DNA from: Botryllus schlosseri
Taxonomy: Eukaryota
DNA length: 64,000 nt
Direction: 5' to 3'
Assembly (NCBI GenBank): GCA_051294905.1
Contig: CM119374.1
Coordinates: 23,374,001-23,438,000 of the forward strand
This document shows, one piece after another, positions 44,428 through 50,930 of this stretch. Below the pieces are notes generated by a model that searched no databases, was not told where the DNA came from, and worked only from the letters and a program-made list of their open reading frames with translations. A program made the translations under genes and the position numbers. How positions within the stretch are numbered: the stretch's first letter is position 1; each line of letters begins with the position of its first letter.

Positions 44428-47400
44428 CTAATCCAACTTCTCTTTAATCAATCTCGGCACGACCTTCGACATCTGACCCGAGGTCAAATAAGTGTCCATG
44501 ACCACGGTGGGCACCACCGGCGCCAGCGAAGTCACCATACGGTCTTGAAAGGACCCCACAAAATACCTGACTTTGGGCGAGCCATTGGTGACGGCCTCCA
44601 CTAACGCGTGTAAGACCCGATTAGTGTTACTTAACAACGGGGTGGACCTGGCTTTCAAGGTCCCTGTCGGGGTGCCGGTAGGACTGATTTCTTTTGTGGT
44701 ATTCGATCGGGCACGCGATAGCGCCGGTTTCGGACTGGCGGCAGGCCCTTTCACAGATGTAGCCCGTTTTTTCAACGATCCAGACGGGCTTGGGGTCGAC
44801 TTGGTTGGGGCTGGGGGTTCCAGCGTTTTGTGCGCTGGCGTCGAAGTTGGGGTCGTGTTCGGGGAGGGGTCCTTGTCGACCGAGTCCGAGACGGAGTTGA
44901 TGAATTCCACGAAATAGTCATCGCCGTAAATGTCGCGCAAATGCTTCGGGACCGTGTTCAGGCTGATGTTGATGTTTGACTCGCATAGTACGGACTGGCC
45001 GACTAAAAAATAATACATCAATGTTTATTTTATTTTTCATTATTTATTATACTTCAATTTTTTTCTCGCGGCTTCAGGACTCGGACAGACAGGCGATCAC
45101 AGCAATATGCAGTTTGTCTCTAGTCGACGGAAAGTTGACAATGCTTAAATATATTTCACCTACATATGGCAATAAAGCTAAACAAAAGAAAGATAACAAG
45201 TTTACGTAAGGATGCAGAACTGGGGCCCTTGACCAGTAGCCTACTTACGAGTGTTACAATGATAAAAGAGTAGCCTATAATACAACGCGCAGCAAACATG
45301 ACAATACATTGATTAGTTATTACAAAGTCATTTAAATGTGATAGTTGAGCTTGTTTTTGCTCTGACAATGTCTAAATTGCTGGTTTGGTGGTGGATAGAA
45401 GAAACAAAACTCGATACTAAGAAGCATGAGCACTGCTGTACAAGTGTACAAGTATTTATATTAGATTTCAAATTATTCCATGTATTATAGTGGAGTAGCC
45501 TTAGAGATGATAATTTTTCATGCCCCACCCCGGGTAAGGAACGGCTAGTGTAAAAAGTATAAAGGAGGTAACGCATCGGCTATAATACAAATTAAATATT
45601 TTCCTCAACATACCTGGAAAGAATGACGGCTCCACCAAAATAACAAACACTCCCCATTTCAACATCTCCTGCCGTAGAGAATCGCTGAACGCTTCGATCG
45701 CAAATTTCGTCATCGAATATGCGGACTGTCCGGCACGCGCAAGGCACCCTTAATTTTAAAAACGGAAAAAATACACTCCCATACTGATATCAATGTATTC
45801 CCACACTGTGTGCATATGCTGTACTACTCGTGGCATAGGTCAGGAAAAATACGGTGGCAGACATTGTTAAAAATACACCAACCACAGCATTTCGTTTAAC
45901 TTCTAATTTGGAGTAAGGCATCAAATCAATTCAATGACTCTGCAATGCAAGCATTGATCGGGGACCTCAAAACATTTGCCGATACACAGTGAGCATTCAT
46001 ATCAACTAAGTGACAAGTCAGTGCCTGAAAAGACCAAACAGGGCTGTTTTTGATGAGACTCTCGGAGGTATAGAATCTCAGTCTGCAATTGAATGATACA
46101 TTTGTATTGGCATAAACTCCAATATTTTTGGCTGACACATTTGTAAAAGGTAAAAAGTCAGCAACTGGTGAAGAATACAAAGATCTTTTGAATTCTCTAC
46201 TAGTTGCTGAAGATTACCTCTCACGAATGTCATATTCAGGTATAATTCAAGAAATATTATTCAAGTGATGCCTATGCAATGTAGGCTTCATAGAGTGGAT
46301 GACACAGACCAAATATGAACGGCTGTTAGGAAGCAAACAGCCGAGACAAAGCCATAGTCTACCTTTGAACGAGAAAAACGAGAAAACGTCGAAACGACAG
46401 ACATCTCACCGCAATGTACACAAATTAGCTCATCTGTATCAATATTTACCGGGGAAACGAGGTACCAGATAATTATGGAAAAGCTGGCGAAAACAAACAT
46501 AAAAGGCACGATAAAACATGATACGGTGGGAGTAGCCAGATGTCTTCTCCACAATATTTAACGCAAGACTAGCAGAGGTATGGAACTCTTGCGCCCTAGT
46601 AGTCATGTGTTCATAGAGCAGTGCTTTTCGAGAAAGTGTTTTCATTTTTATGGCCGTGAGAATTGAACGAAGCCACCATAGGAAAAATAGGCTCTGATTT
46701 AGGATGGTGGGATATAGCTGAAAAATGCATCTATTTTACCGTTGCAGGGGCATTATTGATTTCGTGATGCTGCCTTATCCTGCAAATTTGATAGCACTAA
46801 ACAGAAAAGGTGATCTTGAACTACTTGTTAATACAACTCAATTACTTTTGTGATTGTGCAAATGTGCATTCCATCACTTGCAGTAGTTTCAATCAACCAC
46901 GGACTACAAAATATAATTCAGAATATGCCTTCTACTTGCATGACATCAGTGACTACCATACCAGACCATATTGATTCCCTTGATCCAAATCAGATTGCTC
47001 CCAGTCAAGAGACCTAACGCTCCTTGAATACATATGCGAGTCAAGTACATTTCAGCACAAGGTAGGACATGCCCAATTATATTTTACTACACAAGTAGAC
47101 CAATAAGGCTAATCTTCAAATCAAATATAGGAGTTTCCAGGTCACTACACTGGCAAAACTTGATATACTATACAAACTGGCAAGTGACGTATCTGGTGTA
47201 TCACAAAAATTCCACAAGGTGTCAAATTTCACAATCTATCTTAAGATTCCTAAGCTGCTTATCAACATTAATCCCAGCTTTAATCTGAAATTGAAAAAAA
47301 AATCGATCCCTTACCTGCAATGCTGCTGAGATTAACAATTCTACCACGGGCTTTCCTTATCAAATGAAGCAAAGCTTTGGTAATCCGTATTGTTCCCAGT

Positions 47401-50400
47401 AAATTAATCTGTATTGATCTCTCAAAATCTGCCATTGGGCACCAGTCAACTTCCGCCACGCTGTACACTTCGTCACAGTTCACGAGCGCCCACACACCTT
47501 CAATTAATAATTAAAATATTAATCGTGAAGGGTTGCCACGGTTGATTACAGCGACGCAGTGGACATGCAGAACACACATTAGAAGGATTTTTCACAAAAG
47601 AATCACGGTATAATACTAGCTGGATAAAACCAATCAAACACAGGTGTCTAAGCATGTCATCAAATCACCTACCTAAGAAGCAACCTCTAATCAAATCAAG
47701 CAGCAGATGGCTAATGGCTGAATCAATCCTACAGCCACAATTGAGATTGATGACAGTAATTGAGTGATTGCAGTCACTATCAGAAATCTCAAGAGCTACC
47801 GAATCATTGATATAGCGGCAAAAATTTAGGAAGTAATTGGAACATTTGACAACGTATTCTCGACTACAGAAAGTGTGAATTATTTGGACAAGAGGTATAA
47901 TTTAAAAAATCCTACATGAGTGCGTTTGCTTGACTTATTCGCGAGAATTCCTTGCATGCTACAAGAGATCTTTGAGCATTACACGGGAGACAGCAAGAAA
48001 ATGGATCAATCAGAAGCGTTTGGGTAACTTTCACGTTCCATGATCTGGCACCCATACACAGAAAAGGTGAATTTATAGGCAAATTCACAATTTCCAATAG
48101 ACAGCCCCTGCCGATGTATATCTGATGCAGTAGAGAATGTAAGATTGTTGGCACTAATATATATTAAATGCGCTTACTACGGTTTGGCCCAGGAAAATCG
48201 AAAATGCTGACTAGAGGATGTAAGGGTAAGTGATATAAAAGGATATAAAAAGAGATGGATAAGTTTGAAGACTTATCTGAAATAGAAATACATATTACGG
48301 TACGGTTATGGCTCATTACCATGCCGACAGAGTCTTTTGTATCAGCTCACTACGACTTGAAGGTTTATGACAAGTGCGCGTTTAAGTTAACTAATCCTTT
48401 GTTTCTTTACAGCGTAATCATTTATTCAAGTGGGTAACTCATAAATAAGTGGTCTCTGATCGGGAATAATCAATATTCCGGCTTTTCTCATTTCAAGCAT
48501 ATGACAATGTAGCTTAATAATTGAAAATAGGCAGAATGTGCACAGAACCTCGTAAGATATTGTTAAAATCTCGCAATTACACATTTTTGATGCTCCAAAT
48601 ATGTTTTTCATCGTGAAGTAACAAGTATGAATGATATTACATTGTTGAGGTTGAAAACTTAGAGGGGAAAAGCAACTTCCTCTCTCCAGACTATGTCACT
48701 GGTTGTGTGTGTCACTGGTTCAGAAGTCAAAACCTTTGTGCCATTCCATACCTTCTTCTCCCACGGAATCCTGAATGAGTTCGGCGGCATTTCGAATTTC
48801 GTCTTGCTTCGTCACGTCAAGTTGCAGTATAGCTAACGAGGTCGAGCCCCTAGATGCCAGTGACCTAGCCCCGCTACTGTTACAGTCACGACACCCGGCA
48901 AAGACGTTGTATCCTTGTTCATCGAGACGCAACGCCAGCTCGTACGCGTAAGATGACCGCATGTCGCACCCTGTAAATCACGAGTATTTTACTAAAATAC
49001 ATTTACATGCCCAATAAGAGCTAGGCTGTATGTGCTGGCTATGTTGCAGGTAGGGTCTGCTTTCTTTGCATTGGTGTATAAGTTAAGTCTGTTTGAATGA
49101 TTTTTGCAGACACATTCATAAGTATGGTAGTGCTAGAAAAAGCAACACGCCAATAAATGGTCAAGAACTATGCAAATGGACGACCAACGATGGAGTCAGA
49201 CGTGGACAGCGAGTGCTAAGAAAAATGAACTTTTACCGCCTACACAAATTTTACAACCAGTCAGCAAAAATAGTGGCATCAGTCATTCACATGTATGGAC
49301 AGGTTTTTCCATTCAAAGCCCGAAATCCTTATCCAAGCAACTCTGTCGATCCCTTAAGGCATATTGGATTTGCTCAATCAATATTATTAGAACATAGCAT
49401 CATTACACAATAGCTGCATTGTCGCAATGTAAAGACATAGCATATCCTTCAGTAAGGCTTTAAATTCAGGGCACCAAGTAGATTAAATCTGACAATGGTT
49501 CCAAGGGAATTTGCCCAGAGGGATGTCAAAATTCTTAGTACATGTATGCTAAATCCCAACTGTCTATGAAGATCGAGATGTACTTGATTATCTTTTATCA
49601 AATGTTAGATCATTGGCAGTGCATCAAAACACAGCTGTTGAGATTCAACACATTTTCCTTTTGCACCTAAAGTGTACCAATCATAAGATTCATACTAACT
49701 GATGAACAAAATGAGCATGTACAATAGCCTACTATAGATTATTATATACCTCTCAACAAATTAGTGGTGCGATAAAAAATGTTGGGTTCAGTTACGGTTA
49801 AATTACCAATTGAGATTTCATCAATGGCCAAAATTTAGGTGGAGCCTGTTGTAAGTTTAAGCATGTGTGACTTACAGTGAGTAATATGATATTTGTATAG
49901 TTTGGGAGAAAAAAAAATGATTACAAGTGGGATGTTTGACCAAGGCTTATCATCATCCTATGACATCAAGCTTTTTATTTCCTGTGTCGGTATTTTTACA
50001 CAACAAACTTCCTTATTCGCGAAAGGCCATAGAATGGACTGTGCCGCATAAGCAAGCTAAGAGAGTCGAAGTCTTTTAGATCATTTCTAACTAGGATGCC
50101 TCGATCTCAGTTCCAGCTTTGGCTTGTAACCAATATTAATAAAATGTAGTAAAACATTCCCAAGTTTCAGTGCTGTCACGAAATGATATGGGGTTAATTA
50201 CAATTGGGCCCTTCTAAGTAGCCTTCACAAAATTACTTTGCGAGAAAATGGCCAGTCGCCGCGAAACCTACTACTTAAGTAGAACCTGTGTGTTGAAACA
50301 TTTCTAGCAAGCCATTTCGTACTAATCAATGGCCCAATATTAATTTTGTGTATGCTGTACTTAAAACTACTTTCAACTTTGTTTCATTTCCACAGTTTTT

Positions 50401-50930
50401 ATTTTTCAAATCATTGACCCAACTCCAAAATTGCAACTATGATCAAGTAATTCCAGTAATTTATGAAGCAATTTCACCATTTTTGCAAGTAAACTTTTCA
50501 CAGCCATACCGGTAGGCTATACTATGAAGGCACATTTCTACAACACTATTATACACACTGCATGAGTAACAGACGTGTTTCATGAAAAATTTTCAGCGTT
50601 TACAAAGAGCTGACAATAATTATTTGAGACATTCTTACATAACACACGTTATAAAGCCGTTCATTTGTTTGCGACTAATGGGATAGCATTTATCAGATAA
50701 CATGAAATGAGCAATATGTTTGAGTATAGAATGGCACAAAGACGCTAAACATATTCAATTATTCATACTCGTTAAATACCTAATAGATATTTTATAACGT
50801 TCCCCTTCACAGTAATCACATGGTCAATATTAGGCCTAGTACACTCATGAATATGCAAATGAAAAATATTTGATCCTTCAAGAAGAATTCACAAACCTGT
50901 GATAACCACGGTCTTCTGCATCTTGGCCAT
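44428..50930 (-). CDS. Atypical short-chain dehydrogenase/reductase, SDR9C (RDH/HSD17B6/BDH1-like) family, 381 aa
   Basis: Exons 50930-50897 (MAKMQKTVVITG), 48970-48752, 47497-47315, 45748-45614, 45002-44428 (TAG); GT-AG introns, all phase 1; 1146 nt. Family motifs: YNVFAGC, LQLDVT, QINLLGTIRITKALL, RGRIVNLSSIAG, YSMTKFAIEAFSDSLRQEM, VILVEPS, YGDDYF, AVTNGSPKVRYFVG. Confidence 0.9.

What the first reader, a model, noticed from the sequence alone, without database searches (positions are those of the whole stretch)
45705..50930. SDR with intact catalytic residues but both dinucleotide-binding motifs destroyed: candidate pseudo-dehydrogenase
Seen: the Rossmann motif TGxxxGxG (TGCDSGFG in SDR9C enzymes) reads TGCDMRSSYA (48970-48945), losing both distal glycines and gaining a residue. 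NNAG reads NCDE (47480-47469). LDVT, the helix Asn (INLLG), Ser (NLSSIAG) and YSMTK (45719-45705) are retained, the frame is intact over five exons, and no N-terminal membrane anchor is present. Established: both altered motifs contact NAD(P). Inference: their concerted loss suggests a non-catalytic sensor or scaffold, or a changed ligand, rather than pseudogene decay.
Basis: partly seen in the sequence, partly recalled or inferred. Interest (0 to 1): 0.72.

Follow-up and report, generated by a model that had tools for sequence, protein, structure and literature searches.

The report
Sea-squirt SDR with remodelled cofactor site
This is a real, expressed sea-squirt gene for a short-chain dehydrogenase whose NAD-binding motifs were rebuilt once in an ancestor of sea squirts and kept ever since, so it is not a decaying gene, but whether it still binds NAD remains untested.

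Summary
A five-exon minus-strand gene (50930-44428) encodes a 381-aa SDR9C-type protein reading TGCDMRSSYA for TGxxxGxG and NCDE for NNAG. The N-S-Y-K tetrad is intact and there is no membrane anchor.

- **Expression:** spliced transcript contigs from three studies carry exactly these junctions, including exon 1-2, and no alternative Gly-motif exon exists.
- **Conservation:** the gene is single-copy and belongs to an orthologue group found in all three ascidian orders sampled (Styela, Ciona, Phallusia, Clavelina). All members share the same changes.
- **Selection:** it is strongly purifying. Core dN is 0.056 with dS saturated, and 8 of 9 transcript variants are synonymous. The tree shows a long stem and short internal branches.
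- **Paralogues:** canonical SDR9C genes with intact motifs sit elsewhere in the same genome.

"Destroyed" overstates the change. A 2-residue insertion (not 1) turned the loop into G-x5-S-x-[A/G], the motif with which enoyl reductases (FabI/InhA) hold the NADH pyrophosphate. The adenine-side residues are invariant.

Against retained binding, the Thr that binds the nicotinamide/phosphate is lost and an invariant Glu replaces the NNAG glycine.

My best reading is a still nucleotide-binding homodimeric oxidoreductase with a rebuilt cofactor site (about 0.45). A true pseudo-dehydrogenase is about 0.35, and a pseudogene is excluded.

The parts
50897..50930 (-). Exon 1: ATG and MAKMQKTVVIT plus the first base of G12. 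No signal or anchor sequence. An in-frame TAG lies at 50948-50946 upstream.
   Evidence: Joint 48969/50896 in the X2 transcript contig.
48752..48970 (-). Exon 2: the remodelled Gly-rich loop G12-CDMRS-S18-Y19-A20 (48970-48945), beta2 with invariant D40 (48887-48885), and LDVT (48821-48810).
   Evidence: Joints seen in X1, X2 and X6.
47315..47497 (-). Exon 3: NCDE in place of NNAG (47480-47469), helix Asn N116 (47405-47403), catalytic Ser S143 (47324-47322).
   Evidence: (PF00106 33.1 bits)
45614..45748 (-). Exon 4: Y156-S-M-T-K160 (45719-45705) and VEPSFFP (P186-P190, 45629-45615), where canonical SDR9C has IEPGxFKT.
   Evidence: (PF00106 28.6 bits)
44428..45002 (-). Exon 5: end of the lid region, the disordered insert, the conserved C-terminal helices (NRVLHALVEAV...PKVRYFVGS...MDTYLTSGQMSKVVP.LIKEKLD), and stop TAG 44430-44428.
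44638..44880 (-). Ser/Thr/Pro/Lys-rich insert of about 80 aa (residues about 232-312). It is absent from canonical SDR9C and present in every orthologue, but its sequence is barely conserved.
   Evidence: Alignment. Invariant fraction 0.01 against 0.43 in the core. dN 0.5-1.0. pLDDT below 50 over 241-327 of the orthologue model.

Best explanation
What is shown:
- A real, expressed, single-copy, five-exon gene encodes a 381-aa, anchor-less (hence probably cytosolic) member of the SDR9C family.
- It belongs to an ascidian-specific orthologue group, automatically named 'HSD17B6-like' in Styela and Ciona.
- Its cofactor site was rebuilt once on the stem of that group and has been held by strong purifying selection since.

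What is inferred: the site still binds a dinucleotide, most likely NAD(H).
- A 2-residue insertion converted TGxxxGxG into G-x5-S-x-[A/G], the loop by which FabI/InhA-type SDRs grip the pyrophosphate.
- In the model, Ser18 sits as the N-cap of helix alphaA.
- The adenine-side residues (D40 after beta2, D63-V64) and the whole Asn-Ser-Tyr-Lys tetrad are invariant.

The protein would then act as a homodimeric, Tyr-based oxidoreductase on an unknown hydroxy/keto substrate, lipid-like by family. The nicotinamide half would be handled differently (C92, E94, P190 new and invariant; Thr lost). A disordered Ser/Thr-rich loop near the substrate lid could serve for regulation.
For: Gene model and expression: spliced contigs from three studies carry joints 45002/45614, 45747/47314 and 47495/48750, and X2 also carries 48969/50896. 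There is no retrocopy or second copy in the genome.

Family: PF00106 on exons 3 and 4. The best solved relative is DHRS9, E 1.4e-37. The AF2 model has core pLDDT 94-99 and its best Foldseek hit is DHRS9+NAD, TMt 0.84.

Orthologue group: nine proteins including Styela clava, Ciona, Phallusia and Clavelina share every change. The group is monophyletic (SH-aLRT 100), with a stem of 1.12+0.18 substitutions/site and short internal branches.

Selection:
- Core dN is 0.056 against the nearest orthologue, with dS saturated.
- 8 synonymous to 1 non-synonymous transcript variants, P = 5.7e-5.
- 60 of 72 positions that are at least 85% conserved in canonical SDR9C are kept.

Remodelled rather than decayed:
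- S18, Y19, C92, E94, P190 and D40 are invariant in the clade.
- GxxxxxSxA is the 'divergent' SDR cofactor motif (PMC2792337, Table 3).
- In InhA, Ser20 OH, Ile21 NH and Ala22 NH bind the NADH phosphates, and Asp64/Val65 bind the adenine (PMC4682841).
- Helix alphaA starts at Y19 in the model.
- 8 of 12 DHRS9 NADH-cavity residues are retained (PMC12538056 mapped through).
- N116, S143, Y156 and K160 are invariant.

Homodimer: ipSAE 0.79 against a best control of 0.06. The runs share at least 96% of contacts and partner pLDDT is at least 82. The interface runs through helices 100-128 and 145-173, as in DHRS9. The mark was reached by 21 of 30 solved homodimers and 0 of 23 single chains. The pass may come from memory of solved SDR dimers.
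Against: - The Thr after the PG motif is 100% conserved in 91 canonical SDR9C. It binds the nicotinamide in DHRS9 and the phosphate in InhA. Here it is lost and variable (V/E/D), which looks like relaxed constraint (PMC12538056; PMC4682841).
- Asn112 of DHRS9, a cavity residue, is Cys here.
- An invariant Glu replaces the NNAG Gly, which even divergent SDRs keep as Gly (Gly96 in InhA, PMC4682841). In non-stolidobranch members a second acidic residue replaces the Thr. Two carboxylates near the pyrophosphate site could repel it.
- No binding or docking result could be obtained. The co-fold tool does not score the ligand and the structure tools return no coordinates.
- The structure and dimer were modelled on orthologue P0152 (92% identical in the core, with identical motifs), not on the window protein itself.
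Confidence: 0.45

Rival explanations
1. True pseudo-dehydrogenase. The rebuilt pocket no longer binds NAD(P), and the protein works without catalysis, as a ligand sensor, a scaffold, or a regulatory partner of an active SDR. It keeps the SDR dimer interface, with the Ser/Thr-rich loop as a signalling handle.
For: - Three cofactor-contacting segments changed together on one branch.
- The universally conserved Thr became variable.
- Acidic residues E94 and E/D191 now sit where the pyrophosphate and ribose would lie, inferred from the DHRS9 and InhA contact lists (PMC12538056, PMC4682841).
- The membrane anchor typical of SDR9C is lost.
- The dimer interface is retained.
- Canonical SDR9C paralogues that could supply catalysis exist in the same genome.
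Against: - All four catalytic-tetrad residues and the adenine-binding D63-V64 are invariant across ascidian orders. From my own knowledge, known non-catalytic SDRs usually show the opposite pattern: they lose catalytic residues and keep the nucleotide site.
- The new loop matches a known functional NADH motif (PMC2792337).
- D40, at the position that defines NAD(H) specificity (PMC2792337), is newly invariant.
Confidence: 0.35
2. Changed ligand. The adenine half of the site is kept but the nicotinamide half is re-specified. The protein would then bind another adenine nucleotide or derivative (for example ADP-ribose or a modified dinucleotide), or bind NAD(H) as a permanent, non-exchanging prosthetic group.
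For: The adenine-side residues (D40, D63, V64) are invariant, while every change clusters around the pyrophosphate and nicotinamide side. The new residues are invariant rather than drifting (S18, Y19, C92, E94, P190).
Against: There is no positive evidence for any other ligand. K160 and Y156, which bind the nicotinamide ribose in SDRs, are kept (PMC12538056).
Confidence: 0.15
3. A young pseudogene or decaying paralogue whose open frame survives by chance.
For: Only the unusual motifs themselves.
Against: - The frame is intact and the mRNA is spliced in three studies.
- Orthologues with the same changes occur in Styela, Ciona, Phallusia and Clavelina.
- Core dN is 0.056 with dS saturated.
- The polymorphism ratio is 8:1 synonymous to non-synonymous.
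Confidence: 0.01

Closest known systems
SDR9C family: DHRS9 (SDR9C4), the RDH5/RDH16/HSD17B6/SDR9C7 cluster and BDH1
   Same: - DHRS9 is the best sequence and fold match (E 1.4e-37; Foldseek TMt 0.84 to the NAD complex 9b2f).
- The family signatures are shared: TGCD, (L/V)W.LVN, VNLLG, GR(I/V)VN.SS, Y...K, FSDSLR.E, P..RY..G.
- The alphaE/alphaF dimer interface is the same (PMC12538056).
   Different: - No N-terminal membrane anchor or mitochondrial presequence.
- A 2-residue insertion in the Gly-rich loop with G to S.
- NNAG reads NC[D/A/S]E.
- PG...T reads P[S/A/V/L]..P[V/E/D].
- A disordered insert of about 80-100 aa.
- A conserved C-terminal extension.
- It forms its own long-stem clade, separate from the ascidian's own RDH-cluster-like (C16) and BDH1-like (C10) genes.
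'Divergent' SDRs: enoyl-ACP reductases FabI and InhA
   Same: The cofactor-loop motif is GxxxxxSxA. This gene reads G12-CDMRS-S18-Y19-A20; other orders have G at the last place. It also has the Asp-Val adenine contact and the Lys ribose contact (PMC2792337, Table 3; PMC4682841).
   Different: - The active site is the classical YxxxK, not YxxMxxxK.
- The beta4 Gly (Gly96 in InhA) is Glu here.
- The Thr (Thr196 in InhA) is missing.
- There is no overall sequence kinship beyond the superfamily.
- The resemblance is a convergent loop, not membership.
Non-catalytic or partner SDRs (from my own knowledge): HSDL1, the psi-KR subdomain of fatty-acid and polyketide synthases, the HSD17B8-CBR4 heterotetramer, the RDH10-DHRS3 pair
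   Same: They are precedents for SDR-fold proteins that act through the oligomer interface rather than their own catalysis. CBR4 (4cql) appears among the sequence-related solved structures.
   Different: As far as I know, these typically lose catalytic residues or truncate the fold while the nucleotide site is kept or removed wholesale. Here the catalytic tetrad is fully kept and only the nucleotide-contact motifs are rewritten. No partner was tested.

Membership tests
SDR superfamily (Pfam adh_short, PF00106) | A match to the family HMM above the curated cut-off of 26.6 bits. | tested here: met
   Exon 3 alone scores 33.1 bits and exon 4 alone 28.6 bits. All full-length orthologues carry PF00106 in the precomputed annotation.
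'Classical' SDR type | Cofactor motif TGxxx[AG]xG (PMC2792337, Table 3). | tested here: not met
   It reads TGCDMRSSYA: two extra residues, with Ser and Ala at the distal Gly places.
'Classical' SDR type | Active-site YxxxK with upstream Ser and helix Asn (the N-S-Y-K tetrad). | tested here: met
   N116, S143, Y156 and K160 are invariant in all nine clade members.
'Classical' SDR type | NNAG on strand beta4, and PG...T after beta6. | tested here: not met
   NCDE (clade NC[D/A/S]E) and PSFFPV. The canonical N, G and T are 99-100% conserved in 91 SDR9C proteins.
'Divergent' SDR type (enoyl reductases) | Cofactor motif GxxxxxSxA. | tested here: met
   G12-x5-S18-Y19-A20 in this gene and the other stolidobranch sequences; G-x5-S-Y-G in the remaining orders (PMC2792337, Table 3).
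'Divergent' SDR type (enoyl reductases) | Active-site motif YxxMxxxK. | tested here: not met
   The sequence is Y156-S-M-T-K160-F-A-I. The Lys is at +4, as in classical SDRs.
SDR9C family | The closest relatives by sequence and fold are SDR9C members, and the family's conserved positions are shared. | tested here: met
   DHRS9 is the best PDB hit. All non-clade database hits are RDH, HSD17B6, SDR9C7 or BDH1 proteins. 60 of 72 highly conserved SDR9C positions are kept. The SDR Nomenclature Initiative HMM itself was not available.
SDR9C family | An N-terminal membrane anchor or mitochondrial presequence, typical of but not formally defining the family. | tested here: not met
   The protein starts 6 residues before beta1. 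There is an in-frame stop upstream within the transcript. The same holds in all orthologues.
Pseudogene | A broken frame, no expression, or neutral evolution. | tested here: not met
   The frame is intact. Spliced transcripts occur in three studies. Core dN is 0.056 with dS saturated. Polymorphism is 8:1 synonymous to non-synonymous.
Pseudoenzyme (pseudo-dehydrogenase) | No cofactor binding and no catalysis. | not testable with these tools
   The ligand is not scored by the co-fold tool and no coordinates are returned by the structure tools. This needs binding and activity assays.

The most novel reading that the evidence does not exclude
An ascidian-wide pseudo-dehydrogenase that has been NAD-independent since before the ascidian orders split. 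It would keep the SDR catalytic tetrad, not for redox chemistry but to hold a small lipid ligand or a partner, and would signal through a phosphorylatable disordered loop. That is the reverse of the usual pseudoenzyme pattern: catalytic residues kept and cofactor site lost.
Probability: 0.3. Interest if true: 0.7.

Novelty: new variant of a known kind. Interest (0 to 1): 0.45.

Why it matters
SDRs are identified and classified by exactly the motifs that are rewritten here. This clade combines a classical YxxxK active site with the loop of the 'divergent' type, an invariant Glu at the near-universal beta4 glycine, and a disordered insert.

If it still binds NAD(H), it shows a second, independent route to the FabI-type pyrophosphate grip on a classical scaffold. 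It would also warn against calling SDRs dead from motif loss alone.

If it does not bind, it is a rare pseudoenzyme that kept its catalytic residues.

Either way it is an unstudied chordate gene that automatic annotation mislabels as 'HSD17B6'. It has an orthologue in Ciona, where knockouts and expression maps are routine.

Tried and rejected
- **Organism guess:** I first took the genome for amphioxus (about 495 Mb, notes on 19 pieces).
- **Own-genome searches:** exon 3 alone found only itself. PF00106 returned only single-exon SDRs. A canonical amphioxus RDH query was needed to find the canonical paralogues.
- **dN/dS:** dS is saturated against both available orthologue transcripts, so only a bound can be given, not a ratio.
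- **PDB search for equal-length Gly-loops:** the N-terminal 45 residues gave only chance SH3 hits.
- **Literature:** no paper on the Ciona orthologue under the name HSD17B6, and nothing on this clade in the SDR9C and Ciona papers found.
- **Raw RNA run X21:** only 6% of the run was read, too few reads on the exons to measure level or strand.
- **Alternative exon:** a scan of all six frames of 44-53 kb found no canonical Gly motif.
- **Co-fold with NAD:** the dimer passed, but the ligand is not scored, so it says nothing about cofactor binding.
- **Window protein in remote tools:** a spliced protein has no reference, so I used orthologue P0152 instead of pasting letters.
Full report
**1. Gene model and observation**

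Reading the minus strand and assembling it in a script gives five exons:
- 50930-50897
- 48970-48752
- 47497-47315
- 45748-45614
- 45002-44428

Every intron is GT/AG and phase 1. The CDS is 1146 nt and encodes 381 aa.

Three corrections apply. The Gly-rich loop is two residues longer than the canonical TGCD(S/T)GFG, not one. The fifth exon lies outside the stated span. The PG...T motif after strand beta6 is also changed, to PSFFPV.

The window holds only this one SDR.

**2. Expression and the exon 1-2 junction**

Contigs from three separate studies of the same organism are spliced exactly at 45002/45614, 45747/47314 and 47495/48750. One contig (X2) also carries 48969/50896 and runs past the ATG.

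The tool labels these runs as RNA only by guess. However, the genome holds no intron-less copy of the gene, so the spliced contigs must come from mRNA.

An in-frame TAG lies 15 nt upstream of the ATG, within the stretch that contig covers. The short N-terminus, and so the lack of a membrane anchor, is therefore real.

No alternative exon with a canonical Gly motif exists on either strand of 44-53 kb.

**3. What family it belongs to**

Exons 3 and 4 each pass the Pfam adh_short cut-off on their own. The best solved relative is DHRS9 (SDR9C4), with E 2.2e-10 for exon 3 alone and E 1.4e-37 for the core of the nearest orthologue.

An AF2 model of that orthologue was built. P0152 is 92% identical to the window protein over residues 1-225 and has identical motifs. 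I used it because a spliced protein has no reference. The model has pLDDT 94-99 through the Rossmann core, and its best Foldseek hit is the DHRS9-NAD complex (TMt 0.84).

**4. The orthologue group**

An exhaustive search with exon 2, followed by a full-length search, found eight full-length relatives:
- *Styela clava*, labelled 'HSD17B6-like'
- *Ciona intestinalis*, XP_002121207
- *Phallusia mammillata*
- *Clavelina lepadiformis*
- four unnamed transcript assemblies, two of which I fetched as intron-less contigs

The named species cover Stolidobranchia, Phlebobranchia and Aplousobranchia. The organism of the window is therefore an ascidian, nearest to the stolidobranch sequences.

All nine proteins share these features:
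- no anchor
- GCD-x-[P/R]-x-S-Y-[A/G]
- NC[D/A/S]E
- P[S/A/V/L] for PG, and V/E/D for the Thr
- a 70-100-aa insert
- a conserved C-terminal tail

In a maximum-likelihood tree they form one clade (SH-aLRT 100). The stem is 1.12+0.18 substitutions per site and the internal branches are 0.02-0.35, shorter than most terminal branches of canonical SDR9C proteins.

The same genome keeps two canonical SDR9C genes with intact SGCDSGFG/TGCDTGFG, NNAG and PG..T. One groups with the chordate RDH cluster (99) and one with BDH1-like proteins. The odd motifs are thus specific to this gene lineage, not to the organism.

**5. Selection**

| Comparison | Result |
|---|---|
| Core dN against the nearest orthologue transcript | 0.056, with synonymous sites saturated |
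| C-terminal dN | 0.077 |
| Insert dN | 0.5-1.0 |
| Variants between transcript contigs and the assembly | 8 synonymous, 1 non-synonymous (T65M); about 77% non-synonymous expected by chance; P = 5.7e-5 |
| Core positions invariant across the nine sequences | 43% |
| Positions at least 85% conserved in 91 canonical SDR9C that keep the canonical residue | 60 of 72 |

The radical exceptions in that last comparison sit mainly at cofactor-contact positions: G to S18, N to C92, G to E94, and the Thr. Pseudogene decay is excluded.

**6. Is the cofactor site destroyed or rebuilt?**

The new residues do not drift. S18, Y19, C92, E94, P190 and D40 are invariant across the ascidian orders.

The loop G12-x5-S18-x-A20 is letter for letter the GxxxxxSxA cofactor motif of 'divergent' SDRs (PMC2792337, Table 3). 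In InhA, the Ser20 hydroxyl and the Ile21 amide bind the NADH phosphates, the Ala22 amide binds through water, and Asp64/Val65 bind the adenine (PMC4682841).

The model starts helix alphaA at Y19, which puts S18 at its N-cap, facing where the pyrophosphate binds.

D40 lies two residues after strand beta2. This is the position class that sets NAD(H) specificity (PMC2792337).

I mapped the twelve residues said to shape the NADH cavity of DHRS9 (PMC12538056) through the HMMER alignment:
- Kept (8): G12, D14, Y19 for Phe, D63, V64, Y156, K160, F189
- Changed (4): Thr39 displaced by the insertion, Asn112 to C92, Thr211 to V191, Glu212 to G192

The full N-S-Y-K tetrad is invariant.

**7. What argues the other way**

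The Thr after PG is invariant in the 91 canonical proteins. It binds the nicotinamide in DHRS9 and the phosphate in InhA. In this clade it is variable, which looks like lost constraint.

The beta4 glycine, kept even in InhA (Gly96), is an invariant Glu. Outside the stolidobranchs a second acidic residue replaces the Thr. Two carboxylates next to a pyrophosphate site could block it.

None of my tools returns coordinates or scores a ligand, so this cannot be settled here.

**8. Quaternary structure and the insert**

A two-copy co-fold of residues 1-240 of P0152 scored ipSAE 0.79 against a best control of 0.06.
- The three runs share at least 96% of contacts, and partner pLDDT is at least 82.
- The mark was reached by 21 of 30 solved homodimers and 0 of 23 single chains in the tool's calibration.
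- The pass may reflect memory of solved SDR dimers.

The interface (100-128 and 145-173) is the alphaE/alphaF bundle described for DHRS9 (PMC12538056).

The insert (window 44638-44880) is predicted disordered. It is present in every orthologue but hardly conserved in sequence. It sits between the lid helices and the C-terminal helices.

**9. Verdict**

| Reading | Odds |
|---|---|
| Rebuilt but still nucleotide-binding oxidoreductase | about 0.45 |
| True pseudo-dehydrogenase | about 0.35 |
| Changed ligand | about 0.15 |
| Pseudogene | about 0.01 |

I found no paper on this clade. I class it as a new variant of a known kind.

Noticed in passing
window 46175-46232 (intron 3 of the gene): A short stretch is covered thousands-fold in every RNA run, with loose ends on both sides and many variant letters. 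It looks like an abundantly transcribed interspersed repeat, not part of this mRNA.
   Followed up: no
window 45339-45404 (intron 4): A second repeat-like stretch has depth of about 90-175 in the contig runs and diverging flanks.
   Followed up: no
G000:C16:7124266-7127881 (L004) and G000:C10:8068703-8071618 (L005): These are two multi-exon canonical SDR9C genes with intact Gly motif and NNAG; the PG..T motif was recovered only in the C16 gene, since the C10 match ends before that segment. The C16 gene groups with the chordate RDH cluster and the C10 gene with BDH1-like proteins. The C16 match begins at 'FSGCD', which suggests it shares the phase-1 intron inside the Gly codon of TG with the window gene.
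   Followed up: partly
window 48811 (codon 65): One transcript allele (run X6) carries T65M in the LDVT motif. It is the only non-synonymous variant among nine seen.
   Followed up: partly
G000:C3:2390346-2554230: A tandem array of at least seven single-exon adh_short genes (E 1e-45 to 1e-54) turned up in the Pfam search of the genome.
   Followed up: no
window 46318-48112 (introns 2 and 3): Low-depth (3-6) unspliced contigs appear in run X1 only. They are probably pre-mRNA or a trace of genomic DNA in that library.
   Followed up: no
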